Source: Magallana gigas (Eukaryota). Taken from it: DNA of 64,000 nt. Numbering within the stretch: the first letter of the stretch is position 1; the number at the start of each line of letters is the position of its first letter. The stretch spans positions 59,148,001 through 59,212,000 of the forward strand of contig NC_088854.1 in assembly GCF_963853765.1 (NCBI RefSeq), written 5' to 3'. Both the position numbers and the translations under genes were made by a program. The notes under the pieces were generated by a model that was given only the letters and a program-made list of their open reading frames with translations, had not been told where the DNA came from and made no database searches. This document shows, piece after piece, positions 3,344-63,752 of the stretch.

Positions 3344-6300
3344 TTGAGGAGCAGTCCAGAGGCGCGGCTGTCTTGGTGGGGCAGTATTTTCCTTTAGGAC
3401 ATCGTGAGCAAGTCCCATTTCCAAGAACAGCATACTCTCCGGCGCTACAGTCGGTCGGTGTCACTCTGTAAGTAATAAACTACTGAAGCAGCATAATTCA
3501 ACACAAAACAGCTCCTCATCAAGATGAATTTTAAATGCATGTACATAATGTACATTAATTTTAAAGAAAAGGTTGAATCTAAAGCAATATTTTTTGTTTA
3601 CATTAATTTCTTATTAATATGAAAAAAACTTACGCTGGATCGGTACAAGCTTTTCCTGCAGGACAACTGGCGCACAACTTCTGTGTGCCATCTGGAATCT
3701 CATCTACCAATCAGAAACCAACAGATTTAATTATAATGTAGGAAGTTCATCTGAATTCTCTAAGCACAGTGTGAAATTAACAACTAATTCTACAAATGAA
3801 ACTACAGCACACTCATGCAGTACTCTACATGTCAACTCTACAAACACAAATAGGATTTATCTCTCTCAACAAAGAAACAACAAAGTCATGTGACCTACTT
3901 GCGGCACAGAGAGTGCAGGTGGAGGATTCAGCTGGCGCCACATACCCTGCAGCACAGGATGTGGGGGAGGAGGTGCCGTTTCCACTGCAGGCATTGCCCT
4001 CGGGGCATGATGAACAACTACTGGCTCCTACAAAGTTAAATTAAATTTTCGGTGATGAATAATTTTTAATAATTGACAAGATAGATTATAAAAGATGCAT
4101 TGCAACCTGCTAATGTTAACTTATTAATGGTTTTAGGGGGTTAATTTTTGTAACTAAAAACTCTATTTTTATTGGCATCTTTAATAAATTGTAAAACCTT
4201 TCTATTTAATCTTATAAAAGAACTACCCCATTATAAATCAGACTACTCAAGCCAACTATTTACTCTCAAATTAAAAAAATTAACTCATTGAAATTAATTA
4301 ATAATACCAGTAAATAAATATGCAGTATCTAATGAATCCATAAAATCAATGAAAATTATAAACAAATCCCTGACAGACTTACCAGCAGCCGAGCTGTAGA
4401 AGCCCGGGGGGCAGGAATCACATATCCCCGACCCCTCCACGGAGTAATAACCAGCACTACACTGGACCGGCGTCCCTCTGTTTGGACACTCACTTCCCGC
4501 GGGACATTTCTGACAAGATGACTGAGCTGTTAAAGAGAATCGGAGAGTGAGAAGCATATAGACAAAGCACAGAATGGTGGGACTCCAGTATGACATTCTG
4601 TCAGTAATAAACCATACAGCATTTAAACAATATATTAACATTTCACATCAATTTCCAAGTCTATCTTCATTATCAAAAGATTTTTGATTTATTCAGAAAA
4701 ACAATTTTTAACTAATCATAGGAAATCACAGATAACAGATCGCACCAAGATAAGCCTCTACATTACAGTCTAATTATTACTACATGACAGAGATTACGGA
4801 TTATCTGTGGATGACTTGTAATAATCTCTACATTGCATGACAAGGATGGCGGATTACCTGTGGAGGACATGTAATAATTTCTACAATACATGACAAGAAT
4901 TGCGGATTACCTGTGGATGACGTGTAATATCCCTCTTGACATAGAGTCGGACCCTGGTCTTTGGCGGTACACATTGAGCCGATGGGACAAGGGGTGCAGG
5001 TAGCGGCCCCAACCAGGGAGTAATGGCCAGCATTACAGTCCGTGGGCGTCTCTGTCCCTGCTCCACAAGACTTCCCCGCGGGGCAGTCCAGGCATGTCGT
5101 CGATCCAGCAGTGCTGTATTTTCCTGCCAGACATGTCTATTTAACACCAAAAAAGTACCATTTAGTATAATTCATTTGGTTACAATTGGTGTACACTTCG
5201 GGTATCCACATGTTGTGTACAAAAAGAATATGCCAATGAGATGTATCCATGCTGAGAATGAGTATATTTTGTGTACACTCAGAATATCTTTCTGCAGTGT
5301 ACACTAAGGACACCTACATATTGTATACACTATTTATATTCACTCATGTGTACACTAAAGTATATTGATATATTGTGTACACTTGGTATATATCTCTGTT
5401 GAGTATTGTTACTGTGAGGATGATCATCGTATGTTGTGCAAAGTAACTTACTTTAAGTAAGGAATAATTTATTTACATGTACACTTACGTTCTCTATGTG
5501 TTGGGAACACCTAATGAAAAATATCTATATTTTGTATGCTGAAGATATCAATGTGCCATATACAGTGTATATTATTTTCCTTACTGAGACAATACTATTA
5601 GTCTTTAATTAGTTCCTGTTAAGCTATCATTAACCCTTTATTCCTTATAACTATTCATCCTGTAAGTTTCATACAGAATTCATACATGTTAACTAAATCA
5701 TAAATATTTTAAAGATTTTCCTATGATTAACATGATTTATATTAGTAAATAATGTATAACAGCGTCAGATCCATCAATGCTGTGCAGACTGTCCAGATGT
5801 GCGAGTGATCCGAGAGACATCCGTCTGACCTTTGTGCTACTGACCCTCTCGGGGGAATTCCTCTAATACAACATCAATACACACTGCAGAGACTGCAGAA
5901 TGTGATAAAAGTCTAATGCCAGCTAATTAGGTCTCCTTTATTGAGTCTCCTATCAGACAAGCAAAACAAGATATTGCATTTTGTTCCAGGGGTCCAACAA
6001 AGGGCAAAAGGGCCCACAGAGGGGACAGGGGTCCAAAAAGGGGACAATTAACTTATCTGTGTTCCTCAGTATGTTGTTTGCCACATGAGCATTTAGTGTA
6101 TATTCAGATGTAACACATTGACATCCTATGGAGATATGCAACAGTAGATGAAAAGATTCTAACTTGTGAATAAAATGAACTAAAATCAATAAAAACTGCA
6201 GAGAAGCTAATGTATGGCTTATTGAGTGTTAGCTGAAATCCACAGCTTTAGCCAGCAATCTTTGAATGTCATTGCAATAAACTGGCCATGCATCAATTCT

Positions 6301-13495: not shown

Positions 13496-13597
13496 CTAGC
13501 TGCAGGTCTGTAGCTCCCGGTCTGAAAAAGCTCGGATGGACCTGGTCCATCCGCCATCCGAATTTTTTCAGACCGGGAGCTACAGACCTTCAGCTAG
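13496..13597. repeat. About 100-bp near-perfect palindrome (hairpin mini-element)
   Basis: CTAGCTGCAGGTCTGTAGCTCCCGGTCTGAAAAA pairs with TTTTTCAGACCGGGAGCTACAGACCTTCAGCTAG; inner CGGATGG/CCATCCG also pair. Confidence 0.85.
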
Positions 13598-13632
13598 CCA
13601 AATTCAAAATCAAAGTACTGGGGTATTGACGT

Positions 13633-18448: not shown

Positions 18449-18452
<4 letters not shown>

Positions 18453-20952: not shown

Positions 20953-21279
20953 CTACTCCCGGGCCATGGCCTGGGGGCTCATTCCCTGCAACTCCTGGGA
21001 CTCTTGAACCAAGGCACACAGGGGACAAACGCACCAAGTCAATAAGTCCCCCACCAAGCTTCCTTGAATTCCTTTAGACTCGCGGATTTTCCCTCGAATA
21101 CTGATGACTGCCCACAAATCCACGAGGGGGACGAGGAGAGCTAGGCCACACAGCAGACAGGACTCCCCCACCGCCTCAGCATTCTTCCCGAACTGGTAGC
21201 ACGGCACAAAGTAAGAGATCAAACACAAGCTGAAATTATCAAAGCATCCGAATAATCCATGCTGCCATTCCCCAGACAT
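20953..21279 (-). CDS. PLAC8/cornifelin-family cysteine-rich protein (108 aa), single coding exon
   Basis: MSGEWQHGLFGCFDNFSLCLISYFVPCYQFGKNAE...IRGKIRESKGIQGSLVGDLLTWCVCPLCALVQESQEL shows the hallmark PLAC8 motifs. ATG at 21279; probable 5'UTR acceptor near 21311; CpG-rich upstream region 21340-21900. Confidence 0.93.
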   Translation of the reverse strand: MSGEWQHGLFGCFDNFSLCLISYFVPCYQFGKNAEAVGESCLLCGLALLVPLVDLWAVISIRGKIRESKGIQGSLVGDLLTWCVCPLCALVQESQELQGMSPQAMARE

Positions 21280-21902
21280 ATTTACTCCGTTCGTTAATCG
21301 CTCACACACCTACAAACTTGGTAGAGAAACAGGGAAAAAAGTTTTGCCCAAATGTAACGTAAACTTTTGTTATAGCCAACGCCCCAGGAACGCATGCGCA
21401 GAAAATATTCTGATGGAAAGATGCAAAATTCCCCCCGAGGTTAGCGCGTCACTCGGCAATGCAAGGGATTGTACAGATAATGTAATGGACGTCCACGGGC
21501 AAACACTTATACGACATTCCGTCAAGCTAGTGTCTCACCTGGGAATTTAGTATAATTTAGTATTTATTTTTATAATATTGATTATTAAAAGAAGATTTTT
21601 GTTAACAGTTTGTATAATTTTTCTTGTTATCCCTTCCCAAAGCCCCTTTCTCCCCCTAGCTTATCTGTAACAGCTGCGAATGTGTGCGCTAAGCAGATGA
21701 TAGAATTCCGCGCACTGTTGTCTGTAAAATCGGACGATCGAGTTACCCCCGGCGGCCTGTCGATGACCAGCGTTATGTCAGGTCAATAGATGATCGGGCC
21801 TGTGTATCGCCACGCGTGTCGCGAAAATTAGCATCGCCAGATATAAAACTTTCGCGAATAATATTACAGCGGGTGGCGCGGGTAACGTTGTAGCGGGTGA
21901 TT

Positions 21903-45700: not shown

Positions 45701-48700
45701 CACGGCAAGTTAATTCTAAAGCAGAATGACGGGAGTGAGAGAACTCAGGAGGGGTACTGGAGAGATGGACTCCTACATGGACTGGCCAAAGTCAGGTCAG
45801 TTATAGATAAAGTAGTTAATGGATGGGGGGGGGGGGGGTACTGGAGAGATGGACTCCTACATGGACTGGCCAAAGTCAGGTCAGTTATAGATAAAGTAGT
45901 TAATGGATGGGGGGGGGGGGTACTGGAGAGATGGACTCCTACATGGACTAGCTAAAGTCAGGTCTGTTATAGATAAAGTAGTTAATGGATGGGGGGGGGG
46001 GTACTGGAGAGATGGACTCCTACATGGACTAGCTAAAGTCAGGTCTGTTATAAAGATATAGTAGTTAATGGATGGGGGGGGGGGGGGGGGTACTGGAGAG
46101 ATGGACTCCTTCATGGACTAGCTAAAGTCAGGTCTGTTATAAAGATATAGTAGTTACAGGACTGGGGGGGGGGGGATTACTGGAGAGATGGACTTCTACA
46201 TGGACTAGCTAAAGTCAGGTCAGTTATAGATAATGCCATAGTCACACATTCACAGATTAAATGCCGGATTAGCTACGGAAGCGATCCGGAATCATTCGTG
46301 GCGATATGTATTGACCCGTGGCTTTTCCGTCTGTTATCGTATCCAAACGTAGCAATACTTCTATAGCTGCGACAATTTTTGAACATGTTCAAAATTCCAC
46401 TACGGATGAAACCACCGTAGTACTTCTTTAGAAAAACTTACTAAACCGTTTTAGAACGTAGAAGTCCGTTTTAACTCCTATAAACCTGTAGTAATTCGTA
46501 TGTATCAATTTGTATCCATTCCGTAGTGCATCCGTACTAACTCTGTATCATTAGATTTTCCGGTGTCAACTGTGGAAAATATTCTGTAGTAGAATCGTGG
46601 AGTTGATCTGTGAATGTGTGACTGGGGCATAAAGTAGTTAAAGGATTATCGGGGGTTTACAGGAGAAATGGACTCCTACATGGACTAGCTAAAGTCAGGT
46701 CAGTTATTAAGATACAATAGTTAAAGGATTTGGGGGGGGGGGGGGACTGGAGAGATGAACTTATTCACGGACCAGCCAAAGTCAGTTCAGTAATACATTA
46801 GTTCAAGGGATTGGGGGGGGAGGGGGTACTGGACTTCTACATAATTAATGGACTAGCGCTAAAGTCAAGTCAGTAAATAGATAAATAGATAATTCTCTCT
46901 AATAACTGAAGTGTAATCTTGTATGCCCTCTGGGACCAAAATTGGAAATAAAACCATTATTATTATTATATCAATACAGTAGTTAGAGGACTGGAGGGGG
47001 GGGAGGGGGGGGGGGGGGCTGGAGAAATGGACTCCTTCACGGACTAGCCAAAGTCTACATGGACTAGCTAAGGTTGGATCAATTATAGATGCAGTATTTA
47101 AAATACTTGGTGGGGGGGGGGGGGTACTAGAGATATGGTCTCTTTCACTCAGACTGTTTCATTATTCCTACATATACATGTACATACGTATTGTTTACAA
47201 TCCATCCTTGTATTCTTGTTAAATCCACAGTAGGTCCATAATTCAATTCATCAGTATACTCCTTGATATTTATTCTATTCTATTTAGATATTCTTATTAT
47301 TTATTCTGTTTCTGTTAAGGTATTCTAATGGTGACCTGTATGAGGGAGCCTTTAAAGACGGACAGAGACACGGTCATGGCATCTATCGCCAGGGACAACA
47401 CGCCTCAATGGCCGCCAGTGTTTACATTGGAGAGTGGGTTTCAGACAAAAAGCATGGCTATGGAATCATGGATGATGTCATGAAAGGTGAGGTGGTCAGC
47501 AATTTTTCAGAGGTTCCAATTGTGTAGTTANNNNNNNNNNNNNNNNNNNNNNNNNNNNNNNNNNNNNNNNNNNNNNNNNNNNNNNNNNNNNNNNNNNNNN
47601 NNNNNNNNNNNNNNNNNNNNNNNNNNNNNNNNNNNNNNNNNNNNNNNNNNNNNNNNNNNNNNNNNNNNNNNNNNNNNNNNNNNNNNNNNNNNNNNNNNNN
47701 NNNNNNNNNNNNNNNNNNNNNNNNNNNNNNATTTCAAATTGGTAAAAAGTAGTGAATAAACTAAATTTATTTGATTACTATATACAGGGAAATATATGCC
47801 CCCATTGTATTTGCCCCTTTCCCCCTCGCTGTCAGTAGGTGAATTTTAGACTGGGCGAATCTCGATCTCTCAAATATCTTTTTTCAAACACAAAATTGTC
47901 TGGGTGAATTCTAGACAGAGCAAAAACCATGTGCAAGTAAAGAAGGATGAAGAAAAAAATGGAGCAATAATAATCATGCATACAGTAGTCTTAAGTTATC
48001 CAGAAAGACACTCGGTAATGTGTTTTGTTGTCCAGTTTGACAGATTCAGCTCATGGATTGTGTTTTAGGTTTGTGACTGTGCAATCTGGTATTTTGGCCC
48101 AATACTATATCTGTTAATTTTTAGAGTACATATATATTGTACTAGGTGATGGGTATGATGACTTGGTAATCCAAATGTTGACTGTTACGGGATATAGTGA
48201 TATCCTAATCTTTTTGTCGAACTGGGGTTTTGTGATTTTCCTTCTTTGTACAATCATACTTAAGTATCCAGTGAATAAGCAGATAATGACCACTAATTCT
48301 TTTTTTATCGCTGTCTAGGAGAGAAGTACATGGGGATGTGGCAGGACGACGTCAGACAGGGCAGTGGAATCGTGGTCACTCTGGACGGAATGTACTTCGA
48401 GGGCAACTTCACCAACGACAAGCTGACGGTTAGTAGAACAGAAAGGAATGAAATACACGAAAATTCTTCATGATATTCTCCGTGAATAATCTATCTGTTG
48501 GTATAATCTATACATAACTCTTTATGACTGTGTAAGCTGTGTGACTGACTTTGGCTGTTTCTGTAACAGGGGTTTGGTTTGATGATGACGTATGACAACA
48601 GCTGTTACGAGGGGGAGTTTGCAGGAATTACACAGCTACAAGGAAAGGTCAGTAGTTTGGTAGATATGATACGAGATGTTTTGATTTTTACGAAAAGTTG

Positions 48701-51700
48701 ACTTAAACAAGTTTGAAAAATGTTTGTTGTGATATAACATAATTAAGGAGATTTTCCAGAAACTATTTTTTAAAAGATAATTATATGATGTGTATGTGAT
48801 ATAGGAAACTGGGGATCTCTAACCCTGAAACTATTGAAGGAGAGTTGAAAGTGTCACTTTGCCATTAATATGTCTGTGATTTAATTTAAACATTATTCTG
48901 TTGCACTTGTATGATAACTCAGCACTGTGTATGGTACCTATGAAATAGTGAAAACTAATTTAAATCATTTTGTGATGTGTTTGTGAAAATTATATGGTGT
49001 ATATTTGATAGGGCAAGCTGAGAATGCCAAACCGTGACACCATTGAGGGGATGTTTAGTGGCTCATGGAACGAAGGACTGAAAATCAGTGGAGTCTTTAA
49101 GAAAGCTGAATATACAGACAGCAAGAAAACAGGACACAGACTCTCACAGTAAGTCTATGGATCTGCTAACAGGGTCATAGTATACCCTAAGTCCTTGCAC
49201 CAATCCTTGTACATACTATATGTAGTTATTGTGAACCAAGTAATATACATGTTCATTAAAATCCTTCAGATTTGACAGCAACGTCTACTCACGAATATTT
49301 GTTGCATGCAGGTATAAAACACACTTCTCTAAATAAAACTGCTTTCTGGGTGTATAATGACACATATATTACGGTACTTGGTTTAGAGTATTCTGCATAT
49401 CTTGTTCAAAGATGATTCATTCATTGACTCAGTATTATCAGGGATTTTGTTTGGAGCTTTGTAAAGGAAATTATCATGTCTAACTATATGAAGTTAATTC
49501 AACATTTCTAGTTGCTGTTTTATTACCTATTAATTTAACATTCTCTGAAAGTTCCTTAACCTGCAGTCATGCAGCTTCAGGACTTAAAACCCTATTGCTT
49601 TTCCTGATAATTTTCACTCTCTGACATTTACCAAGTCAGTTTTACCTTATATATTCAAGGATCTTTGGCACCATGGCCGTTCCTGCCAATCAAAAGTGGG
49701 AGGGCATGTTCCAGCAGTGTATCAATGTATTCAGGGTCAAAGGTCAGGACCAACTTAACACCCAGAAAGCCTGGGAAAATGTGGCAGTTACTCTGTCAAA
49801 GGGGAAGAAGAACATCAGAGAAATCCACCCAAAGTAAGAGATGACTACAGAGAACGTGCTGATATCAGCTTGTATATGTACATGTATATACATATTATCA
49901 AAACCGATTGGTGAGGTTTTTCTGATAGCATCAGGATCAATTCTGATGGTTATGTCAAACATAACCAAACCGCTATTGTTAAAACTTTATGATTTAATCA
50001 ACTTGTGTTCTTAGGCGAAGTTATCTATGCAGACTTATGCAATGCCAGAGCTTATATTGGATTTCACCGAAAAGTTATTTTCCCACAACATCAGCTATTC
50101 CCTTGTGTTTAAATTCTATGCAAAGCTCTCTCTGTGTAAACTGGTGTTAAACCGTAGTCTCAAGTCATGCTATAGAGTATGCACAGCTCTCTTCTTGATG
50201 GAAGAGGATCAGTGATGTTGGATTGTGACAATGGCATTTAAACAAAATACATGCATGTCTCAACGACATATGGTAAAGAAGTTGTGTTTTGATTGAATGT
50301 TCAAAACTTTCAGGGGCAGTGATTGCTAGAAAGTTTTTTAAAGTCTCTATCTCTTATGGTTTCTGAGTAGTGGCAAAAACAAGCGCTCATATAAAAGAGG
50401 CATTAACTATTTAACTGTTTCAAGGTTGGAGTTGAAGGGCTATATTTTTAAATGCCTTAAAGAGTCCTTTCACATTCATGATATGTTTTCTCTACCAACA
50501 TAAACAATAGAAATATAAAAAAATCATTGATTTCCTGACTTTCGACCTTGACCTTAATGTTATTTTAATCAGCCAAGGTGGACATTTCCATCCCATGTGG
50601 TCTGATGTCTCTATGATGAATGGTTCCTGACTTGTTTGTGTTTTTATTGAAGTTTAGGAGTTTTCAGGGGCAATAACTGCTACTAGGGGTCATCAAATCC
50701 TTTCGGTATGAATAGAAGAAGTCTCTTGGTGAATTACAGATATTCGTGAAAGTGTCAAGTCTCTACCTGTAATGGTTTAAGTGTTAAGTGATTACAATCA
50801 TATTGTAATATAGATGCAATAATTCCATAATTATTTCAAGGTAGGCACCGAAAGGTTATATTTTGAAATGTCTTCAGAAATCATACTACATCCATAATTA
50901 TAAGTTTTTCAATACCACTATTTATATGAAATCTCATTAATACATGTATACAGATTTTTGAATGACTTTGACCTTTGATCTTATGCCAAGGAAGATGTTT
51001 CAATCCCAAGTGGACCAATATCTCTACAATGTATGGTAAAAATGCTGTGTTTTTGTTGAATGTACGAAAGTTTCAGCAGCAAGAACCGCTAGAAGGGGGC
51101 CTCAGGCCCATTTGTTATGAACAAATAATGAAATTGAGGGAGTGTCTAAGTGAACTAATCACAAATACAGCATGGATGGTAGATGCTACAGCTGATAATG
51201 CGTTGCATTGAGTGATGACACTTTCTAATCGGTGTGTATTTCAATTGCGATTCACAACAAACATTCTGATTGGCACATTTATATAGACCCACCCATTATC
51301 AAATGCATGTTGAGAACATGATGCTAACATGTAAAAACAAATGTTGGAGAGAGAAAACTTAAAATAAAGTTGTACTTGCAAGTTAACAATTACAAACAGA
51401 GTTTTTTGACAGGTCATGATGTTTATGTACATGTGTAAATAATGTGAGTGGAAAAAAAACAAAGAAAAAGTTCTCTAAAAGCAGGGATACTGGAATGGTA
51501 TTCTCTTTTGAGAAGTGGACAGGCAATGTCAGGCATAGCCTTCATCTACATGTATGCTATGCCTGTCCACCTCTCAAAAGAGAATACAGAATAAGGTTAA
51601 TCACAGATCAGTCCAAAATTGAACATGTTTGTGCCTTAAATTTCAAGTTTTGTGTACATGTTTGAAAACACATGAACACTTATAGAAGTGTGTAATTGAT

Positions 51701-54700
51701 CGGTTGAAGTTCAATAAAATGCAATATTTATTGTCAGTACCTGTTGAGAATTTTGTGGAATAAGCTACAACAAAATAAATATTCCTTAAATTGATGGCTG
51801 GCCAAATTGTATACCCTATTGGGCAATTCAGCAAGCTATTGAAATCTACCAGTATTCTGTAATTAACTGTACAGTAACTGAATTATCTTTCCTTGAAATA
51901 GGCCCTTGTCCTTCATTTGAAGGAAAGTGAAAATAACACTTATTTAAAAGTATATATTAATCAGAATATGTATTTTCTAAGTTCACTAAACTTCAAGACA
52001 GAGCAAAGACACTGAATGAATAGTTAAAACAAAATGAAAGTACAACACCTGGTTACGAAAATTACCACATCTAAAAATAGTACAGTAATTCCATAGGTAA
52101 GGTGTTGTCCTTCAAAATGGAGTCATTTCTAACAAGAATGTAAGTAAAAATCAATCTTCTAATTTATATTTGAATTTAGTCATAATGTGGTGCATTAAAT
52201 GTTTATTTTTAGCTCACCGAGACGAAGTCAGGGGGAGCTTATGCTATACCGTCGGCGTCGGCGTCTGCGTCCGCGTCCGGACCTGGTTAAAGTTTTTGTT
52301 GCAGGTCCTGTATCTAAGCTATTACTTGTCCTATCTTCACCAAACTTGCATGGATGATGCATCTGGACTTACTTATGGACTTGAAAGACTTGGATGCTGA
52401 ATCTCAGTCCTAAATTTCAGATGCTGGAGGAGGTTAAGGTTGTTGGACCAGGTTAAAGTTTTTGTTGCAGGTGCCCTTTGATAGCAATATCTAAGTTACT
52501 ACTGGTCCGTACTTCACCAAACTTGCATGGATGGTGTGTCTTATGATACTGATGCACCAGACAGGCTTGAGTGCTGAATCTGAGCTATAGGTTTCAGATG
52601 CTGGAGGAGGTAAAGGTTTTTAGAGCAGGTTAAAGTTTTTGTTGCAGGTGCCCTTTGATAGCAATATCTAAGTTACTGCTGGTCCGTACTTCACCAAACT
52701 TGCATTGATGGTGTGTCTTATGATAATGATGCACCAGGCAGGCTTGATGCTGAATCTGAGCTATAGGCTACAGATGCTGAAGGAGGTTAAGATTTTTAGA
52801 GCTGGTTAAAGTTTTTGTTGCAGGTGCCCTCTAATGATTATATCTTAGTTACTACTTGTCCTAACTTCACCAGACTTCCATGGATGGTGCGTCTTATGAT
52901 ACTGATGCACCAGACAGGCTAAAGAATGCTGAATCTGAGCCATAGGTTTCGGATGCTGGAGGAGGTTAAGGTTTTTAGAGCTGGTTAAAGTTTTTGAAAC
53001 AGGTGCCCTCAGATGATAATATCTTAGTTATTACAATTGTCCTAACTTCACCAGACTTCCATGGATGGTGCGTCTTATGATACTGATGCACCTGACAGGC
53101 TTGAATGCTGAGTCTGAGCCATAGGTTTCAGATGCTGGATATGGTTAAGTTTTTTGGAACAGGTCACATGTTTAATAGATGATAGTACTATTTCAAACTT
53201 GCATAGTTGATTAAACTGTAATATGAATGAATCACAGAGGAAGCTTCAGATGCAGAGCTTGATCTCCATTGTCAAGGATGCTAAAAAATATATCTTAGTT
53301 ATTACAGGTCCTAACTTCACCAAACTTGAAGGGATGGTGTGTCTTATGATACAGATGCACCTGACAGGCATGGATGTTGAATCTGAGCCAAAGGTTGCGG
53401 ATGCTGGAGCAGGTTAAGGTTTTAATTGCTAGTGCTCTCTGATGATGATATCTCAGTTATTACTGGTCTGAACTTCACCATACTTGCATGGAGATGCTTC
53501 TTATGTATACTGATGCACCTGATGGGCTTGAATGCTGAATCTGAGTCATAGGTTTCGGATGCTGGATGAGGTTTAGTTTTTTTGGAACAGGTCACATGTT
53601 TTATAGATGATAGCTTGCATAGTTGATTTAACTATATTATAAATGAAACGCAGAGGTTGCTTCAGATGCAGAGCCAGATCTCCATTATCAAGGATGCTAA
53701 AGAAATTTACCTCACTCAAACCTGCTCGATAGATAGATGTGTTTGTTGATAAATGATATAACATGATTCCTATGATATAGTATTGTATGGAATAAAACAA
53801 TATTGTTTTAATATGATACAATATAATATCATATGTAATATTATAAAAAGTTATATGATATGATATGATATTGTATCAATATTTTTTTTATTTTATGTAA
53901 TGATATCGTATCATGATATCGTTATGTATAGTATTGTATATTATGATACAATATTGTATAATATTATATTGTATTATTAATTTATTATTTTATCACATGA
54001 TACTGTTACATAAGATATTGCAAAATATAATATTTTATCCTATGATACAATATTGTATATTCCATTGTATTGTATCATACGATATTGTATAGTATGATAT
54101 TAGTTTCTGTTATATAGAATTATATCACATGAAATTGTACAATATGATACTGTAATATTATATTATATCGTATCATACGATATTGTATAATATGATATTG
54201 GCTTATAATATGATATATTGTCACATCACATGAAATTGTATTGTATGATATTGTAAAATATATTATAATTGTATCATATGATACAATATGTATAATATAA
54301 TATTGTATTATATAATATTTTACTTTATCACATAATATTGTATCATTTGATATGATACAATGTTGTATCAAATTATATTGTATCATATGATACAATATCA
54401 TATTATGTTTCAAAAATGATACAGTATCATACAATATCATACCATATTATACAATATAATATCATATGTTTCAATGTTATGATGTATTATGTATTATGAT
54501 ATTGTAATATAATACTATATTGTTTCATATATTATGATATTGTATTTTGTGATCAAATACAATAACGTTTAACACAATACAATGTCATATCATACATTAC
54601 AATATCATCATTGTTTATTATGGTATTTTATTGTATTATATGATATATATTGTATATATGATAGGATGCAATATTTAATTTTATATTATTGTATTGATTA

Positions 54701-57700
54701 ACATATGAACATATGATTATAATACAATTTTTTGACAGATTATATACGATATTGTGTCAAAACAGAATCCATGAATATCCAAGATCATAAAGTATGATTT
54801 TCATTTAATATGATAAAGGTGGTCTCATAAAGGTGAAGTCTCATAAGGGTGATGTCTCGTCTCGGTGAGCTTTGTAATCTGTGATTACCTATGTTTTATG
54901 TTATAATATTCTGTTGTCTGTCATTGATTTCATTTTGACTGTATGCAAACATGGTGATGTCAATTTATAAACCATTGAAGTGTTCATTTCAAAAATGGGT
55001 GTTTATTGTCAATAATTGATAGATTTTTTGTGTTTCTTTAATTATGAAAAATAAAAGGCACATTATAAATTATTCTCTATTAAGAAGTGGACTGGCACAG
55101 CCTACGTCCATGGATGTAGGCTATGCCTGTACACTCCTCAAAAGAGAATAATTCTAAATGGCCTATTTTGTAAGCAGTACGTCTCCAAGCCATTTTTAAA
55201 ATCCGTTGAAAAAGCCCCTCTCCTCCTTTTAAATATGACAAAATCTTGAAACAAAGTTTAAAATAAGTATTTTTAACCCAATCAAATCCAATAAAGCCCA
55301 AAGAACTGTAGCTCCACTTGAAATTCAGGTTGACTGACCGCAGAGTTACAGTTCCATCCATACAAAAAACTATATTGTTTGTACATAAAAAGTTGTGCAT
55401 GGTTTGCCTGTTGAGCTTTAGCTCTGAAGCTAAAAATTATAATAAAAAAAACACAGTTTATTCGACACTTCTTAAGCTTTCAAAAATATGCATATTATTA
55501 ATGACAGATATGAGGGACTTGAGCATATGTCAGAGTCAGTGTTTGTGGGACTGTGTGATATAATGGGGACCTCACAACAGGTGGCCATCAGGAGGGAGGC
55601 AAGGGACATCAGGGAGATGGTGGACAGACGAGTGACATGTAACAATGGGACCATTGAGATGATGAGTGGAAGTTACAGAGAAGGATTTAGACTGGAGGGA
55701 TCAGATATAGACTTTATGTACTGGCCAAACAACCACCGAGTGATCATGGACATGTCTCAGTTCGAGTATTACAACACAGCCAATACAACCTTGATTCTCT
55801 CTGATAGTTCTGAGAGTCCACCAGGATTCACTCTACTTCAGTTACTGACTCCATCAAGATATAGACAAGTCCAGTCAGCATGTGTCACAATGAATGATAG
55901 AGTCTATATATCTAGTTCTACATACAGACAGTTAACTTGTTCATTAGTTCATCCTAATTCTACTGTACACGGACCCTGTGGTAGTGGTGTATATGGAGGA
56001 GTACTAGAATATGACACTGCCATCTGTTTTGTTTGTGACTTTTGGCCTCGGTCTGCCTCCTCGTGGATAGACAGATGTCACTCATGGCCTGATCCTGAAG
56101 TTGTCAATGACATTGTCAGAAATGGCTGTCACTTTGTAGCAATAGGACACCCATTAGGACCACATGGAAATAGAGAATGGAGAATTTCATTTTCTCTGGC
56201 AGAATATAAACTTGTTTCATCAATGAACCACTGTCAATTTTTGACTTATGGATTGTTAAAACTTTTCTTAAAAGAAGTAATGAATCAACAGTCAGAGGAA
56301 ACCAATAAACTGTTGTGTTCCTATCACATGAAGACAACAGTTTTTTGGGCGATTCAACAAAACACACTACCTCACTGGTGTCCACAAAATCTCCTGGCCG
56401 GTTTCTGGGTCTGCTTTAAACTTCTCCTTAAATGGGTGCATGAGGGAGTTAGTCCAAACTTTTTCATCCCACAAAACAACCTATTTCTGACAAAGGTCCA
56501 TGGCTCAGCACAAAACAGATTATTCCTACAGTTACATGAATTGTACAAGAAAGGTCTGGCCTGTCTGTTACAGAGTTCCTCAATCAGGTCCTACATCATT
56601 GATGTCCTGTACAATCCTAGACTTTCTATATGTACAGATGAAAGTATTATGATGTCTGAAGTTGATTATGATGTAGAACTTGTCAGGGAGTCCAATAGAG
56701 CTGTTGTTTCTGAAGTAGATCTATTTGGTATTTCAAAAGCCATACACACAATAGAACAGTTGGTAGAGTCACCCCTGACACGCTATCAAGTTGTTACAAT
56801 ACAGAGTGTTACAGCCTCTTTATTTCAGTGTACTGCATTTCAATTACAAAAAATGTACACTAACACAGGTTACAACAAGCAGATGTATATTGCAGACAAA
56901 ATGTCCTGTCACATGTTGAAATTAGCAGCCAAGTTACGATGTGTATCTGACATGTTGTACATTGCCATGTATTATTACAAGACACTCAGATACAGGGAAG
57001 CTTTATCTGTTCTAGAGATGACAAAGGTCAAGTTAGCACAGCCATATCTGATGTACCGGGGTATAAGGGACATGTAGACAGAGAGAGGTATACTGAGGCT
57101 GTAGGGGGACAGTCCTGGTCTACAAAGAGCAGACAGGCTGTAGCAAGGGATATCAAACTTGACCATGAAATCTGTTATATCAGTGAACTAATACCAGAAC
57201 AACAGTCTGCTCTACAAAACAAAGATGATGCATTACATATCCCAGTGTTTGTAATGTTACACTTCCTAGAGTTCTTGTGTTACAGACACCTTGATACAAC
57301 ATTATCACAAACAGCTCTAGATGAGCTACAGGTCCTAGTCCACCATGATCAGGGACTGTATATATTTCATCTATACAGAGACATCTCCTGGGAGATCCTG
57401 GGGATCTGTCAACAGATCACGGGGAACCTCCAGGCTGCTCTATACTCATACCAACAGTCATTCACACAGTATCCGTTGCACAGAATACAAACTGCTACAC
57501 ACAGGAGAATACAGGACATAGTTGGAACAATCTCACACCAGTAAATAATTACCTATAATATAGGAAACGTTCTGAGATTGAAAGCTAGTAACAAACTTAG
57601 TATAATTATGTATAAAGATAAGACAGATTGTATTACGACATTCCTGCATTATGATAAATCTATCCTTGAATCACATGCTACTTTGGGTCTATTTCAGGGG

Positions 57701-58364
57701 TATTTGACAACTGTACATGTGACTTATATTTTTAGTTGTTTGTTAGCAGTAGATGTAACATAGCATTGCCTCTAAGTTATGTATGACAGAATGAGTGAGT
57801 AGTAATACATTGCAGTGCGTCTGGGTTTAGCAGTGTAATACAATACAGATCAATTTACTACAATATCCTTGAACTGATAAAGTCTGTGACTGACGGAATG
57901 AATGTACTATGCTTTGCTAGTCCAGTTTGAAATACTGTATTATGGTTTACATTTCCTTATCAACAGTGTACTTTACTGCTGTATTTATGCAATGTTTATT
58001 GTATTTCTAATTTTTTCATATTAAAACAATGCACTGAAAGAAAGCATTCTTTTTTAAATGCACTGATGTTTAATCAATGTCTTGACATTTATATTTGCAA
58101 TCTACAGGATATGCATTTGTAACTTTTTTTTTTATCATGATGTTGTTTATATATATCTGCAAGTTGTGAAAATATGGTAAAGTCCCTAAATCTTTCCACA
58201 CATGTATTTTATCTTTAATACCATAAAACGGGAGGCCCAGGAGCCATATCGCTCACCTGAGTAACATTGGTCAAAACTCTAATCAGCAAGCGGGAATATG
58301 TATTTGGAATCAAAAGACATACTATCTAGTTTAATAAGAACAAAGGAATTTCTCTCTCTTTCTA

Positions 58365-58410
<46 letters not shown>

Positions 58411-61400
58411 AGGAGGTGATAAACAAAAGTCTCATACCATGGTCCAGAGTACGCATAGCTCTCTCCTAGATAGGAGATGATCGTACATGTTGAATGTGGT
58501 TTGCTTACTTACCAGTCAAGTGATTGAGATGAATTTCTCAATTTCTACACCTTTCAATCGGAAATCGACAGTCAATAAACAAATTTAACGATGATATGAA
58601 AGAACTTTAGACAGAAGTGGAAAGTGCAAAGGGGTCTATCTACACGTAGGTAGAACTGAGCAATCTTTGCTTGCCAAGTTTCCAATTCGGTTATTCTTCC
58701 TTACCGTACCACATGGTATGAATTTACACACGTGTAAACATACATTACCATACATTTTACCACAGATGTTATTTCTTCACTTGTCTCTAAATTCCTTTAA
58801 ATGCCATCACTAGACCAATACAGTGGCGTGGTTTGTTTACATGTAAAAATGATGACTCCTGATCTGCTTTTTGAGGTCGATTTGCTTAAAGATGATTTAT
58901 TAGGAGAAAGTTTGGGGCAAGTTAAGTGACAACTACATTTATGAACAGTCGTAAACTGAATGAACAATTTTTAATTGATTATTTTCACAGAATTAAAGGT
59001 ATGATATAATGTCAATTATATCTGTTCACAGGGCTTCTATATATGTCATAGACAGCAGAGTGGATATGAACCCCTGTGATCTGATCATACCTAGCATAAT
59101 TCATGCAAAGTAAATTGCAAGTTTTTCATAATTGAAATATGCACTGTACATTTTATAGATATGTACATCTATAATCAAACCCATTTTTACTTAGAGCCAC
59201 AGCCATATTTATCGTGTGATTGTTATGTCACAACAAATGCCCCAATTCTGATTGCCATCAGAAACAGGCGAATTTTTCATTTTCTGTTATGTTGTTGTTT
59301 TGTCTGTACATAATTTAGTCTGCACAGCAGCCAATCAGAAGTAAACTGAGTCCACCAATATGACAGTTTGTGGTCATGAACCGGGTATGGTTTATGCATG
59401 ACGTAGCTGACAGACTTGAACGTAATGCTATACCGGTATTGAAAAAACCTCACCAAATTCATTATGATAATAATACTGTAGGTATTTACATGCATATGTG
59501 TTTTGTACACTTTGTCATTAATATTTCCATTGATTATAAATGTATAAGCTGAAAAGCAGATATTCTAATATGGATAAAAATTTTGGTTTGTGATCTGAAA
59601 TGGTTTTGTTGGAATTTAATTTTGTTCTTAACCATATAAACGCTTTGATTTTATTGAAGAATATGAACCCCCAAAAGAATTTTCTGTTTTTAATTAATTA
59701 AATACAGTACATTCAAAATGTCTAACACGTCAATTTTGATAAGGAATCACATATATTGTAAATTTGCAATGTGTACTCAGTGTTTCCATTAAATATATAA
59801 TCATGTTTTTTACCTGTTGTTCACCTGTTTTACCTGTCTTACCTGTGTTTCTGGTCAGTCCCTCCAATAAGATACGGAGGATTCTGACCCTAGCGGAGGA
59901 GCTGGAGACGATCCCCCCTCACAGCAAGGGGAGGCTTACTGTGGAGTACTACCACCAGATCAAAACCTACCTACACAAGGTCAGTCAAACGGTCATACCA
60001 TCACAGAAAAGGCCACTAGTACTACCGCCATATAATGTCCTACTTACACAATTTCAAACGGTCATACCATCACAGAATAGGCCGCTAGCACTACCGCCAT
60101 ATAATGTCCTACTTACACAATGTTAAACGGTCATCTCATCACAGAATAGGCCGCTAATACTACCGCCATATAATTACATACTTACACAATGTCAAACGGT
60201 CATACCATCACAGAATAGGCCGCTAGTACTACCGCCATATAATTACATACTTACACAATGTCAAACGGTCATACCATCACAGAATAGGCCACTAGTACTA
60301 CCGCCATATAATTACATACTTACACAATGTCAAACGGTCATACCATCACAGAATAGGCCGCTAGCACTACCGCCATATAATGTCCTACTTACACAATGTC
60401 AAACGGTCATACCATCACAGAATAGGCCGCTAGCACTACCGCCATATAATGTCCTACTTACACAATGTCAAACGGTCATCTCATCACAGAATAGGCCGCT
60501 AGTGTTACATGTAGCATCATAGAAAGACGTACTTAAAGGGACTTGGGCACAATTTAAGATCAAAAATTCTTTTTTTTATTTTTTATGTACAAAATGGTTT
60601 ATTAGTGCATTTTAAATGATGAACCAAAATATTGAATGTTTAAGTCAAGTTACAAGCGATATATAGGGGTAGGAATTGGTTGTTATGTTTAGAAAGCTCA
60701 AGTCTTATAGTTGTTTACAAAAAATGTTATGTAGAGAATTACCATTTCTTTGACAAGATGACATGTTAAATCAATTTAAACTAATTCAGTATCTTCATAA
60801 ATACTATTATCAACAAAAAAAAGGTACATTAGATTGAAACTTGCACCGATACAACACATATGTAAAAATGACAACATTCGGGCTTTGTTTACAAAACAAA
60901 GAATTATGAACTCTGTATCTTAATACTTAAAACTTAATATTTGACTTTCAAATTTTGACAAAGCATTATAAACTTCTATATTTATCAGTATAAACATTGA
61001 ACATGGAGAAATAAAATTTGAAAATTTTAAGTCAAATCGTGTCCCTTTAATACACAATGTCGGTCAAACTTCTCATCACTGAATAAACTTTAGTTTTATA
61101 TTGTGATTTTTAGCTGAATGAAAATTAAAAGGTAAGAAATCAGTCCCAGGATATATAAGAAGTAAAGTATTTTGTTCTTTCCAAAAATAACTATAAAAGA
61201 TTGATAACTATAGAAGATTGATAGGTCTGGATTACATACTTTTATTTTGTGTTACTTTCACTTTGTGTTGTTCCCAGGCTTTTGACCTGCCCATTCACCC
61301 CCTGGGTAAGCTAATGGAGGGCCTGGTGGATGTATTCCGTGCGGCGTATATTGGAGTGGGAGCCCACCCCAGACTGTTGGACCACGCTGTTAAGGAGATC

Positions 61401-63752
61401 ACTTCATTTGTGTCCAGACTCTACAATTGTGTCAGGTAACACTTTTTACCATACACTTTACCATCAGGTAACACTTTTTACTATACACTTTACCATCAGG
61501 TAACACTTTTTGCCACTGTACCATCAGATTACACCTTCTAACATACAAACATTGTGCCATAACATGTATTTGTGGGAACACACAAGTGAAATGCCTTCCT
61601 CTAAAATCTCTGTAGGATTTATCTGTAGTCACTACAGTATTTACTTGAAGTTCTCTATAGAATTTACAAGTAGTTGTTGATAGGAATTACCTGTAGTTGT
61701 CTTTAAGAATCATCTGTATTCATCTATGAGAATTACCTGTAGTTATCTATAGGAATTACCTGTAATATTCTATAGTAATTACCTGTAGTATTCTGTAGAA
61801 ATTACCTGTAGTTATTTTTGCTCTACCCACAGGATCCTGTTCCCAGACCTCTCAGAGACAGGGGGCCCTCTGCTGATTGAAGCCAAAGCAGCCAGTGAAG
61901 GAGGGACAACTCCAGAGACGGATGACATTTCGTAAGTACCCCGCTGTCTAACACACTCTTTGAAGTGTTTTACAAACTTATTCATCTGATGACATTTTTG
62001 TAAAGTTTGATTACACAGTTCATTTCTCTTATTTAATTTTAGGTAGAGGTACTGTTTCTCAAAAATGTTATTCAAAGCAGGTTTTATTTTTATTAATTTA
62101 AATTTTCATATAGGATGAGCCTTACTATACACTCAGGCAATTAGGCCTCACAATAGGCGGAGCTGTATCATGTGACATTTTTGCAAAAAAATTCACGTGA
62201 AAAGAGTGCTCACATGAATTTCTTTTAAATTATAGGCTGTAATTGATGATACATAATTCAGTGTTAACAGTTATAGGCTGTAATTGATGATACATAATTC
62301 AGTGTTAATAATTATAGGCTGTAATTGTTGATATATAGTTCAGTGTTAACAGCTATAGGCTGTAATTGATGATACATAATTCAGTGTAAAAGTAATAGGC
62401 TGTAATTGATGTTACATAATCCTAATTGTTATAGGCTGGTGGTGAGCTGTGGTACCCTCATACACCCGATCCTCCTCCCTAAGATCTACCCACCCCTGTT
62501 TGACCTTTATGCACTCTACAATGACAAAGATGATGAGAAGTATTGGGAGAGGGTGACGAAACTGAACAAACAAGGAGATATAGGACTAATGGCATTTCTA
62601 GGAATTGATCAGTAAGTATAATCCCGGAGATATAGGATTAATGGCATTTCTAGGAATTGATCAGTAAGTATAATCCTGGAGATATAGGACTAATGACATT
62701 TCTAGGAATTGATCAGTAAGTATAATCCTGGAGATACAGGACTAATGGCATTTCTAGGAATTGATCAGTAAGTATAATCCTGGAGATATAGGACTAATGG
62801 CATTTCTAAGAATAGATCAGTAAGTATAATCTGCGATATATAGGCCTGATGGCTTATCGAAGAATTGATCAGTAAGTATAATCCACGATATATAGGACTG
62901 ATGGCTTATCTAGGAATTGATCAGTAAGTATAATCTGTGATATATAGGACTGATGGCTTATCTAGGAATTGATCAGTACTGATGGCTTATCTAGGAATTG
63001 ATCAGTAAGTATAATCTGCGATATATAGGACTGATGGATTATTGGAATTGATCAGTAAGTATAATCCGCGATATATAGGACTGATGGTTTATCTAGGAAT
63101 TGATCAGTAACTAATAATGGCATAACAGGGAATTTTCAAATGAGTTAAAAAATTTCCATTACTTACTTTTCTGAAACTTAGCATATGAGTGACCAATACA
63201 TGTGTTAGAATCTCATCTTTGTATTTCAGGAAGTTCTGGTTGATTGATGCAGTGTTAAAGGAAAAATCTCCAGTAGGTACCCTGTTTTCTGTACTTCACT
63301 GTTGATAAATGTTGTGTCTCTGCCATGACAGTTGTTTGATGCACGCTGTGTTCACGTACTAGCTTTGTCTATGTTGTAGAGTCTGTCAGCCTTGAGAAAC
63401 CAGAGCTATTGTTCTGCCATAGAGACACTGCAACACATAAGGTTGGTAGAAACAATTTAATCATTATTATTTACTGGTATATCAATGAACTTCAAGACAA
63501 TAACACAATCTTTTCTAGCTCACCTGAACCAAAGGTTCAAGTATTCCTTTCTTAACACGTGTTTTCCCTCATCCATCCACCCCTTAAATCATTTTTAACA
63601 TATGATTGGAACAGCTCTTCAATAAATCTTGGGAGACATCCTTGTTAATAATATATATTTACTTAATTTCTGTATTTTTCTTTTTCAGCACAGCCTTTAG
63701 TCCCAAGGAAAAATTAGAAGTCATTCAGAAAACATTTTCAGAAATAACAAAG
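36746..63752 (+). CDS. ALS2: Alsin (Rab5/Rac1 GEF; RCC1-like, DH, PH, MORN, VPS9 domains); start codon unresolved (candidate 36628), 3' end beyond window
   Basis: In-frame GT-AG exons: 36746-36990, 37294-38637, 38732-38846, 39306-39402, 39562-39636, 40042-40154, 40405-40468, 40620-40791, 40886-40968, 41301-41473, 41695-41860, 42290-42424, 42910-43038, 44442-44509, 44660-44726, 44922-45115, 45498-45563, 45700-45795, 47320-47486, 48319-48428, 48570-48647, 49012-49148, 49660-49833, 59859-59979, 61278-61435, 61833-61931, 62435-62611, 63230-63272, 63380-63441, 63689-63752. Motifs: [26 protein letters not shown] (RCC1), [14 protein letters not shown] (DH), [12 protein letters not shown] (PH), [14 protein letters not shown] (MORN), [20 protein letters not shown] (VPS9); domain order is that of alsin. 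Confidence 0.95.
42411..42580 (+). repeat. About 73-bp degenerate repeat copying the exon end and donor of ALS2 exon 42290-42424
   Basis: CCCAAACTGATA|GTGAGTGGTACT reappears as ..AAAATTATT-GTGAGTGGTACT and CCCAAACTTACT-GTGAGCAGTGCT, with the shared block GTACTAGTGTTTCTAGTATTATGCCAACAT. Confidence 0.7.
45752..47140 (+). repeat. About 84-bp tandem array (about 11 copies) copying the MORN exon end and donor
   Basis: Unit GGGGTACTGGAGAGATGGACTCCTACATGGACTGGCCAAAGTCAG|GTCAGTTATAGATAAAGTAGTTAATGGAT+poly-G; interrupted by a MITE. Confidence 0.95.
46234..46629. mobile_element. PIF/Harbinger (Tourist-like) MITE with TAA TSD inserted into the array
   Basis: TIR TGCC(AT/CC)AGTCACACATTCACAGAT; TAA at 46231-46233 and 46630-46632; removing it restores the array unit TTATAGATAAAGTAGTT. 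Confidence 0.88.
47531..47730. other. Assembly gap (N run)
   Basis: Run of N. Confidence 1.
52206..53720 (+). mobile_element. HINE/Helentron-type non-autonomous element with an internal ~166-179-bp satellite array
   Basis: Starts TTTTTAGCTCACCGAGACGAAGTC...GAGCTT with a (CGTCGG)n microsatellite. Tandem units begin GGTTAAAG at 52285, 52451, 52628, 52804 and 52983, with decayed units after. Right end unclear. Confidence 0.8.
53750..54770. repeat. Low-complexity AT-rich pentamer-based tract (ATATT/ATGAT/ATTGT)
   Basis: About 1 kb of degenerate 5-mer reiteration. Confidence 0.85.
55488..57544 (+). pseudogene. Mab-21/cGAS-like receptor (cGLR) nucleotidyltransferase with helical C-terminal region; frameshift at about 57060 (pseudogene, allele or assembly error)
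   Basis: NTase motif [19 protein letters not shown], third acidic [47 protein letters not shown]. The ORF stops at 57077, but the -1 frame continues [15 protein letters not shown]... without a stop into ORF 57245-57544; restored length about 685 aa. Confidence 0.88.
58369..58408. repeat. (CT)n microsatellite
   Basis: Pure dinucleotide run. Confidence 0.97.
59944..60502 (+). repeat. 69-bp tandem array (about 8 copies) derived from the exon end and donor of ALS2 exon 59859-59979
   Basis: Unit GTCAAACGGTCATACCATCACAGAATAGGCCGCT-AGTACTACCGCCATATAATGTCCTACTTACACAAT; the second half mirrors the exon end AGTACTACCACCAGATCAAAACCTACCTACACAAG. Confidence 0.92.
60533..61050. mobile_element. TTAA-flanked non-autonomous DNA transposon (Kolobok-like)
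   Basis: TTAAAGGGACTTGGGCACAATTT ... AAATCGTGTCCCTTTAA. Confidence 0.7.
61432..61532 (+). repeat. About 33-bp repeat (3-4 copies) starting at the donor TCAG|GTAAC
   Basis: TCAGGTAACACTTTTTACCATACACTTTACCA reiterated right after exon 61278-61435. Confidence 0.88.
61686..61815 (+). repeat. About 24-bp repeat just upstream of an acceptor
   Basis: AATTACCTGTAGTTATCTATAG-like units. Confidence 0.75.
62230..62440 (+). repeat. 41-bp array copying the acceptor TTATAG|GCTG of ALS2 exon 62435-62611
   Basis: TATAGGCTGTAATTGATGATACATAATTCAGTGTTAACAG with units near 62230, 62271, 62312, 62353 and 62394, then the real acceptor at 62434/62435. Confidence 0.9.
62575..63110 (+). repeat. 52-bp array (about 10 copies) copying the exon end and donor GATCA|GTAAGT
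   Basis: Unit GGAGATATAGGACTAATGGCATTTCTAGGAATTGATCA|GTAAGTATAATCCT. Confidence 0.95.
63514..63640 (+). mobile_element. Decayed HINE 5' end
   Basis: TTTTCTAGCTCACCTGAACCAAAGGTTCAAGT, same type of start as the element at 52206. Confidence 0.45.

What the first reader, a model, noticed from the sequence alone, without database searches (positions are those of the whole stretch)
4798..63110. Recurrent splice-junction-seeded minisatellites: introns filled with tandem copies of their own exon/intron boundary
At least seven unrelated tandem arrays (4798, 42411, 45752, 59944, 61432, 62230, 62575; units 33-84 bp) each have a unit spanning a real splice junction. The first unit (last, for the acceptor case) is the functional site and the copies extend into the intron. 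They occur in two genes, on both strands, at donors and at an acceptor; I found only two comparable minisatellites away from junctions (26771, 35250). This suggests a junction-targeted duplication process (inference: e.g. R-loop or lariat-associated slippage or repair) that builds rows of decoy splice sites and could be raw material for alternative splicing, exon extension or intron gain. I know of no named system for this, but did not search the literature.
Basis: partly seen in the sequence, partly recalled or inferred. Interest (0 to 1): 0.8.

Follow-up and report, generated by a model that had tools for sequence, protein, structure and literature searches.

The report
Splice-junction minisatellites ("mirages") in oyster introns
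Several introns of two Pacific oyster genes hold tandem copies of their own exon/intron boundary; this is a real, genome-wide habit of the oyster, but the same kind of repeat is already known as "mirages" in amphioxus and as the F7-type VNTRs of human genes, and short introns explain about half of its frequency.

Summary
All seven arrays exist, and each has a terminal unit spanning a real splice junction. RNA reads confirm four junctions; spliced protein alignment or reading frame supports three. The exon-proximal site is the one used: the first donor, or the last acceptor. The arrays are not assembly artefacts and lie far from the N gaps.

These are "mirage" minisatellites (amphioxus Adh3, TnC, globins, PGBD5), the same kind as the human F7, CBS, IFI6, LMNB2 and PDGFA junction VNTRs.

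I tested enrichment in the alsin gene and in 187 kb of 19 myosin-gene stretches, chosen without regard to repeats. Against random placement, junction-anchored arrays are 3-4 times over-represented (P about 0.001 and 0.0001). That null is too lenient. The ancestral introns are short (about 100-350 nt), so 20-50% of tolerated 30-80 bp duplications must include a junction. Against this geometric null the excess falls to about 2-fold (12 observed, 5.8-6.7 expected; P 0.003-0.012).

A junction-targeted mutational process is therefore not required, though a modest residual bias remains. A lariat origin does not fit, because every unit carries exon bases. Other windows of this scan found the same pattern on other DNA of this genome.

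Verdict: a new member of a known kind.

The parts
4781..4929 (-). Donor-type junction minisatellite, 53 bp x 2.8, in a Cys-rich (TNFR/ephrin-receptor-like repeat) gene. The authentic donor follows exon base 4911 (CACAG|GTAATCC). Decoy 1 is intact; in decoy 2 the GT has become AT.
42400..42590 (+). Older donor-type array of about 75 bp x 3 diverged copies. The authentic alsin donor is at 42424|42425 (ATA|GTGAGT).
45751..46233 (+). Donor-type array, 82-84 bp x 5.7. The unit is 46 nt of a MORN-repeat exon plus 36 nt of intron, joined through a poly-G run. The authentic donor is at 45795|45796. The first decoy (45880) is identical to it and in frame.
46625..47150 (+). Degenerate older copies of the same 82-bp unit. 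They are separated from the proximal array by an insertion with terminal inverted repeats (46233-46625). The array and the insertion together make up nearly all of the 1524-nt intron.
59947..60503 (+). Donor-type array, 69 bp x 7.5. The unit holds about 33 nt of exon (about 73% alike) plus intron. The authentic donor at 59979|59980 (AAG|GTCAGT) is confirmed by RNA. The decoys are weak (AAT|GTCAAA).
61432..61540 (+). Donor-type array, 32 bp x 2.6 plus one degenerate copy. The unit is 4 nt of exon plus 28 nt of intron. The authentic donor at 61435|61436 is confirmed by RNA. A copy-number variant with about 3 extra units appears in two runs.
62230..62439 (+). Acceptor-type array, 41 bp x 5. Five decoy TTATAG|GCTG sites lie upstream. 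The last copy is the authentic acceptor at 62434|62435, confirmed by RNA.
62574..63118 (+). Donor-type array, 52 bp with about 10 decoys in two subfamilies. The unit is 38 nt of exon plus 14 nt of intron. The authentic donor at 62611|62612 (TCA|GTAAGT) is confirmed by RNA. Read-through meets a TAA stop at once.
36746..64000 (+). Alsin (ALS2) gene with RCC1, DH_ALS2 and MORN domains and C-terminal exons. About 28 exons and 54 junctions were mapped. It runs off the window end.

Best explanation
These are 'mirage'-type minisatellites, the same kind as the human F7 intron-7 VNTR.

Origin (inferred): a short segment of 30-85 bp straddling an exon/intron boundary was duplicated in tandem. Replication slippage, unequal exchange or out-of-register repair synthesis then amplified it into the intron.

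Shown:
- The units carry the gene's own conserved exon end plus its splice signal.
- The arrays are unrelated to one another.
- The copy next to the exon is the one spliced.
- At least one array varies in copy number.

Why they are tolerated (inferred, in line with the F7 work): the splicing machinery takes the exon-proximal site, and nearly all decoy choices would give a frameshift or an early stop, hence unstable mRNA.

Why they are so frequent here:
- Oyster genes are rich in minisatellites.
- Their introns are short, so a large share of harmless duplications must include a junction. This accounts for about half of the cases.
- A residual excess of about 2-fold remains, and junction arrays reach higher copy numbers. 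Neither is explained.
For: Anatomy in register. RNA joints use only the first donor or the last acceptor.

The exon ends inside the units are ancestral. Distant alsin orthologs (P0010, P0015, P0017) align up to the junction and on into the next exon. In other genes the units hold conserved motifs such as the myosin P-loop.

Independent DNA contigs cover the small arrays and the edges of the large ones. A variant with about 3 extra units is seen at the 61432 array.

84 array units show no cross-similarity beyond two pairs of neighbouring arrays.

Frequency:
- Alsin: 6 of 14 arrays against 1.5 expected by random placement.
- 19 myosin stretches: 13 of 61 arrays abut exon matches against 4.2 expected.
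- 15 of 61 arrays have a strong sense-strand donor plus an upstream open frame, against 4.2 at random positions and 4 on the antisense strand.
- Six more arrays were confirmed by Pfam on the flanking exon.

Geometric null: expected 5.8-6.7, observed 12.

Consequences of decoy use. Precedents: PMC1557585, PMC3087553, PMC3902484.
Against: - The first duplication and the mode of growth are inferred, not observed.
- The residual 2-fold excess (P 0.003-0.012) is not explained by neutral geometry. Nor are the higher copy number of junction arrays (median 4.0 against 2.2) or the strong clustering in some genes (13 arrays in 10 kb of one myosin gene; dispersion index 2.7).
- Rare decoy use cannot be excluded. 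RNA depth was low and 30 joints were not listed.
- RNA was examined for only four of the seven arrays.
Confidence: 0.8

Rival explanations
1. A junction-targeted mutational process is the main driver. Candidates are polymerase pausing or R-loops at splice sites, repair at the transition from conserved exon to highly polymorphic intron, or breaks at nucleosome edges. Duplications would arise preferentially at exon/intron boundaries.
For: - An excess of about 2-fold survives the geometric null.
- Junction arrays have more copies and make up 17 of 28 well-developed arrays.
- Several arrays start or end within a few bases of a junction without spanning it.
- The phenomenon is otherwise described from amphioxus. 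That both amphioxus and oysters are extremely polymorphic is my own knowledge, not tested here.
Against: - Half of the cases need no targeting.
- Unit boundaries lie anywhere from 4 to 46 nt into the exon, so no fixed cut site exists.
- A lariat origin is contradicted by the exon bases in every unit.
- There is no direct evidence on DNA damage or R-loops.
Confidence: 0.2
2. The arrays are kept by selection because rows of splice signals are useful. They might recruit U1 snRNP, regulate splicing, back up a mutated site, or supply alternative isoforms or new introns.
For: - Most decoy donors still carry an intact GT and often the identical 9-mer.
- One decoy (45880) would add 28 in-frame residues to a MORN-repeat exon.
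- Papers on human genes and amphioxus discuss intron gain from such repeats.
Against: - No decoy joint is among the supported RNA joints.
- Nearly all decoys give stops or frameshifts.
- Distal copies decay and lose GT.
- Copy number varies.
- Acceptor-type arrays do not fit a U1 role.
- Intact decoys are equally expected from the youth of the copies.
Confidence: 0.08
3. The repeats came first, and the exon boundary later moved into one unit (exonisation of a pre-existing intronic minisatellite).
For: None specific. It would give the same present-day picture.
Against: - The exon parts of the units encode residues conserved in distant alsin orthologs, at 74-77% identity over the exon that ends at 62611.
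- In other genes they encode core motifs of the myosin head.
Confidence: 0.02
4. The arrays are assembly artefacts, for example from gap closing.
For: The window contains three N gaps.
Against: - Copies differ by 6-17%.
- No array is near a gap.
- An independent DNA sample from 2024 yields a contig across 61015-62259 with one mismatch, plus contigs across the edges of the larger arrays with raised depth inside them. RNA-library contigs carry the arrays and a copy-number variant.
- Fourteen runs hold at least half of the sampled words of this stretch; the 20 holding runs come from 10 studies.
Confidence: 0.01

Closest known systems
[quoted passage not shown] Sources: PMC3087553, PMC3902484; Canestro et al. 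2002 as cited there.
   Same: - Tandem units of tens to about 150 bp span an exon/intron boundary.
- Both 5' and 3' boundaries are affected.
- Splice signals are reiterated inside the intron.
- Normal splicing is undisturbed.
- Length is unstable.
- Several cases can occur per gene.
- The mechanism is called unclear.
   Different: Mirages were described anecdotally for a handful of cephalochordate genes. Here they occur in a mollusc, at high density, with a quantified frequency: about a quarter to a third of genic minisatellites, or 17 of 28 well-developed ones. A geometric explanation accounts for much of that. I found no oyster report in the library.
Human junction-spanning VNTRs: F7 intron 7 (37 bp; 4 nt exon + 33 nt intron), CBS intron 13, IFI6 (6-16), LMNB2, PDGFA intron 4. 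Source: PMC1557585.
   Same: The first monomer spans the exon/intron boundary. The authentic donor is followed by identical pseudo-sites, and only the most upstream site is normally used. Copy number is polymorphic. The 61432 array has the same '4 nt of exon' anatomy as F7.
   Different: The human cases are isolated loci and all of donor type. The oyster has many per gene and also has acceptor-type arrays. In IFI6 and CBS a few proximal pseudo-sites are used, which was not seen here at the available depth.
Intron creation from tandem duplications or arrays: the Rogers AGGT model; Zhuo et al. 2007, cited in PMC2812944; De Grassi and Ciccarelli 2009.
   Same: Tandem repeats that carry splice signals alter intron sequence and length.
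   Different: In those cases the repeats create new introns or alternative splicing inside former exons. Here pre-existing introns are lengthened and the mRNA is unchanged.

Membership tests
Mirage / F7-type junction-spanning minisatellite | Head-to-tail array of units of roughly 10-160 bp | tested here: met
   TRF periods are 32-84 bp with 2.6 to about 10 copies. The 42411 array is seen only as three diverged copies.
Mirage / F7-type junction-spanning minisatellite | One terminal unit contains the authentic exon end (or start) and its splice site | tested here: met
   Four junctions are confirmed by RNA joints and three by spliced homology or frame. The exon part is 4-46 nt.
Mirage / F7-type junction-spanning minisatellite | The other units lie in the intron and repeat the splice signal | tested here: met
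   Most decoys keep GT or AG, and many are identical 9-mers.
Mirage / F7-type junction-spanning minisatellite | The authentic (exon-proximal) site is the one used and pseudo-sites are silent | tested here: met
   This holds for the four arrays between 59.9 and 63.1 kb. All supported joints use the first donor or the last acceptor. It was not tested by RNA for 4798, 42411 and 45751. Rare decoy use is not excluded.
Mirage / F7-type junction-spanning minisatellite | Copy-number polymorphism | tested here: met
   Contigs of two runs carry about 3 extra units of the 32-bp array ('goes back 82' plus 14 letters). The other arrays were not assessable from short-read contigs.
Dispersed repeat or transposon-borne satellite (including introner-like elements) | Related copies of the unit at many loci | tested here: not met
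   All-against-all BLAST of 84 array units finds only two hits, both between neighbouring arrays of one locus. The units contain the host gene's own coding sequence.
Tandem exon duplication (mutually exclusive exons) | The unit contains a whole exon with both splice sites | tested here: not met
   Units hold only 4-46 nt of one exon edge and a single junction.
Intron gain by tandem duplication of an exonic AGGT | The intron is absent from orthologs and flanked by duplicated exon sequence on both sides | not testable with these tools
   No gene structures of related species could be fetched. The mRNA here is co-linear with orthologs.

The most novel reading that the evidence does not exclude
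Exon/intron boundaries in highly polymorphic marine invertebrates (oyster, amphioxus) may be true hotspots for the birth or growth of minisatellites. One possible cause is that repair synthesis or fork restart goes out of register where conserved exon meets indel-rich intron. Another is that it does so where splicing pauses the polymerase. Junction minisatellites would then be a main route of intron lengthening and a standing supply of thousands of natural decoy-site ladders.
Probability: 0.2. Interest if true: 0.7.

Novelty: new member of a known kind. Interest (0 to 1): 0.45.

Why it matters
If the oyster genome holds thousands of these arrays, it is a ready-made natural experiment on splice-site choice. 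Each array offers identical sites in a row of which only the exon-proximal one is used.

The arrays are also a measurable source of intron growth. One 1.5-kb alsin intron is almost entirely copies of its own donor region plus one inserted element.

For annotation they are a practical hazard. Gene predictors can pick a decoy site or read through the repeats.

The geometric argument is a caution for any claim that repeats 'target' splice junctions. The null model must collapse the arrays and use the ancestral intron lengths.

Tried and rejected
- Cross-species comparison of the arrays failed. P0001 is not on record as a gene, and P0002 sits on a 2.2-kb contig only.
- A larger genome sample was planned (remaining myosin stretches and 24 kinesin loci). 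The 30 kinase loci were mostly intronless genes and were not used for the test.
- The original mirage paper (PMC117041) is not held, so it is cited second-hand.
- Two splicing and tandem-repeat papers (C. elegans CeRep25B; human spl-TRs) proved not to concern junction-spanning arrays.
- Five arrays first counted as junction-anchored were checked. Four only abut a junction or sit in a polypyrimidine tract, and one (L035:2456) has an unclear exon end. They were not counted as spanning in the strict geometric test, and all five were left out of the strict spanning list.
- The 47267 'array' at the acceptor 47320 is low-complexity polypyrimidine sequence and was not counted.
- The lariat model was rejected because the units carry exon bases.

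Full report
WHAT IS THERE

The window is Pacific oyster DNA. Its public holders are labelled oyster, and it maps to G000:C2:59148001-59212000.

The plus strand from about 36.7 kb to the window end carries the alsin (ALS2) gene. Pfam finds RCC1, DH_ALS2 and MORN domains. A search of protein representatives returned a near-identical 1341-aa model (P0001) and full-length distant orthologs (P0010, P0015, P0017).

Spliced alignment of P0001 gave 22 introns with GT..AG ends. RNA joints from two RNA contig runs and one raw-read run gave the last six.

The minus strand between about 5.1 and 4.3 kb carries exons of a Cys-rich repeat gene, with sub-threshold TNFR_c6 and Ephrin_rec_like hits.

TRF finds six of the seven arrays at the stated places. 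The seventh (42411) is three diverged copies of about 75 bp.

Printed in register, each array has a terminal unit made of the exon's own last (or first) bases plus the splice signal, and the other units run into the intron. Exon bases per unit are roughly:

- 4798 array: 20 of 53
- 42411 array: 25 of 75
- 45751 array: 46 of 82
- 59984 array: 33 of 69
- 61432 array: 4 of 32
- 62230 acceptor array: 4-5 of 41
- 62574 array: 38 of 52

RNA joints show that the first donor is used at 59979|59980, 61435|61436 and 62611|62612. They show that the last acceptor is used at 62434|62435.

At 42424|42425 and 45795|45796 the first donor is the one that reproduces P0001 and keeps distant orthologs co-linear. 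At the minus-strand donor (exon end 4911), splicing to the acceptor at 4526 gives an in-frame product that continues the Cys repeat pattern.

The exon ends inside the units are ancestral. The exon ending at 62611 is 74-77% identical to three distant orthologs. The decoy copies themselves still hit those residues in tblastn.

NOT AN ARTEFACT

- Copies differ by 6-17%.
- An independent 2024 DNA sample gives a contig over 61015-62259 with one mismatch. It also gives contigs over the edges of the long arrays, with raised depth inside them.
- Contigs of two RNA libraries carry the 32-bp array with about three extra units, a copy-number variant.
- The gap at 47531-47730 lies in an intron and P0001 runs on across it. 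No array is near a gap.

FINER ANATOMY

The intron 45796-47319 consists of three parts:

- the proximal array;
- an insertion of about 390 nt with terminal inverted repeats;
- degenerate older copies of the same unit, out to about 47150.

So this intron really is 'filled' with copies of its own boundary.

In several arrays the copies nearest the exon are the most like the authentic unit (62574, 45751, 61432, 4798). In the 59984 array all copies are equally distant from it.

Decoy donors are often identical 9-mers. Only decoy 45880 would keep the frame without a stop, adding 28 residues. All others give a frameshift or a stop, and at 61432 and 62574 the stop comes at the first codon.

IS IT MORE THAN CHANCE?

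In the alsin span, 6 of 14 TRF arrays (period 12 or more) have a junction in the correct terminal unit, by an automatic rule with 10 nt of slack. Random placement predicts 1.5 (P about 0.0015). The rule counts two borderline arrays (47267, 61237) and misses two real ones (62230, 42411).

For an independent sample I took exon matches of the Pfam myosin-head model in the whole genome. I fetched 19 stretches covering 187 kb and 94 exon matches. These were chosen without regard to repeats. Results:

- Of 61 arrays, 13 abut an exon-match end in the right orientation, against 4.2 expected (P = 0.0001).
- Without any annotation, 15 of 61 arrays have a strong sense-strand donor with an open frame of at least 35 codons upstream in their first unit. 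Random positions give 4.2 and the antisense strand gives 4.
- Pfam on the flanking frames confirmed six more arrays at myosin or IQ exons.
- In-register prints show textbook cases: six copies of the myosin P-loop exon end plus GTAATC, 20 copies of ACAATG|GTAAGT, and a 96-bp acceptor array.
- One myosin gene has 13 arrays in 10 kb.
- Array units are unrelated to each other.

Taking both samples together, about a third of genic arrays are junction-anchored. So are 17 of 28 arrays with at least 3 copies and a period of at least 20. Junction arrays also have more copies (median 4.0 against 2.2).

A STRICTER NULL

Random placement on present-day sequence is too lenient. The arrays themselves inflate their introns. 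Collapsed to one unit, the array-bearing alsin introns are only about 100-350 nt long. The 47 fully defined myosin introns have a median of 249 nt.

For a duplication of length u in an intron of length I, the chance of spanning a junction among harmless positions is 2(u-1)/(2(u-1)+I-u+1). For these sizes that is 20-50%.

I counted only arrays that truly span a junction, after four abutting or unclear arrays were dropped. Results:

| Sample | Observed | Expected |
|---|---|---|
| Alsin | 6 of 14 | 2.35 (3.33 with inserted elements removed) |
| Myosin introns | 6 of 17 | 3.41 |
| Combined | 12 | 5.8-6.7 (P 0.003-0.012) |

So geometry plus tolerance explains about half of the cases, and a residual excess of about 2-fold remains.

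MECHANISM

Most likely these arrays begin as ordinary local tandem duplications and grow by slippage, unequal exchange or out-of-register repair synthesis. That is inferred.

They persist because the exon-proximal site is chosen. This is shown here for four arrays, and the F7 work explains it by 5'-to-3' scanning (PMC1557585). They also persist because decoy products would carry early stops.

A lariat origin is excluded by the exon bases in every unit. A junction-associated bias in origin or growth (R-loops, pausing, repair at the exon/intron transition) is neither needed for most cases nor excluded. The residual excess, the higher copy numbers and the clustering in certain genes would fit it.

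WHAT IS KNOWN

The literature has one. [quoted passage not shown] They occur at both 5' and 3' boundaries, do not disturb splicing, are unstable in length, and have an unknown mechanism (PMC3087553; PMC3902484).

Human F7, CBS, IFI6, LMNB2 and PDGFA carry the donor-type version. I found no report for oysters.

Earlier notes and three follow-ups of this scan describe the same thing in other windows of this genome, including OSTF1, OvoA, a GPCR, ERCC6L, MRPL38 and ADAM10. None of them names mirages or tests enrichment.

VERDICT

The feature is real and recurrent, and it is a new member of a known kind.

Noticed in passing
window 55488-57077 (+): An intronless 529-aa open frame with Mab-21 nucleotidyltransferase and Mab-21_C domains (cGAS-like). 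It is nested in the 10-kb alsin intron on the same strand.
   Followed up: partly
window 28505-30196 (-): An intronless 563-aa arrestin-domain open frame (Arrestin_N + Arrestin_C). The first 'exon' of the P0001 alsin model (29798-29890, + strand) lies antisense inside it, so it is probably a mis-prediction.
   Followed up: partly
window 59808-59846, 61607-61816; L040:1830-1984: Short repeats built on TTACCTG, the reverse complement of the donor-like CAGGTAA. They sit in the pyrimidine tract just upstream of three acceptors without spanning them. Whether this is more than pyrimidine-tract composition is unexplained.
   Followed up: partly
window 46233-46625: An insertion of about 390 nt with terminal inverted repeats (MITE-like). 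It splits the 82-bp junction array, which shows that the distal copies are older.
   Followed up: partly
window 38470-38523 (+): An in-frame 24-bp x 2.2 coding repeat (PDPQGVEV twice) inside the large alsin exon. It shows that tandem duplications also survive inside exons when they keep the frame.
   Followed up: no
window 49834: The near-identical protein model P0001 ends by reading into the intron (AAG TAA). The real gene goes on to exons at 59.86-63.8 kb, as orthologs and RNA joints show. The public model is therefore truncated.
   Followed up: partly
window 58201-58400, 60401-61200, 63401-63600: Read depth in the thousands in both DNA and RNA runs marks high-copy dispersed repeats inside alsin introns.
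   Followed up: no
window 62801-63200: Raw RNA reads give more depth over the distal subfamily of the 52-bp array (5.5 and 2.5) than over its proximal part (0.7). The cause could be unspliced RNA, reads from elsewhere, or minor decoy use.
   Followed up: no
L035 (G000:C1:75375001-75385000): A myosin gene with 13 minisatellites in 10 kb, at least 8 of them anchored on donors or acceptors of consecutive exons. One intron carries a donor-type array at one end and an acceptor-type array at the other.
   Followed up: yes
window 52311-53164; 1054-2241 (-); 20953-21309 (-): A 177-bp x 4.8 satellite in the large alsin intron, a gag-like open frame with a zinc knuckle, and a PLAC8-family open frame.
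   Followed up: no
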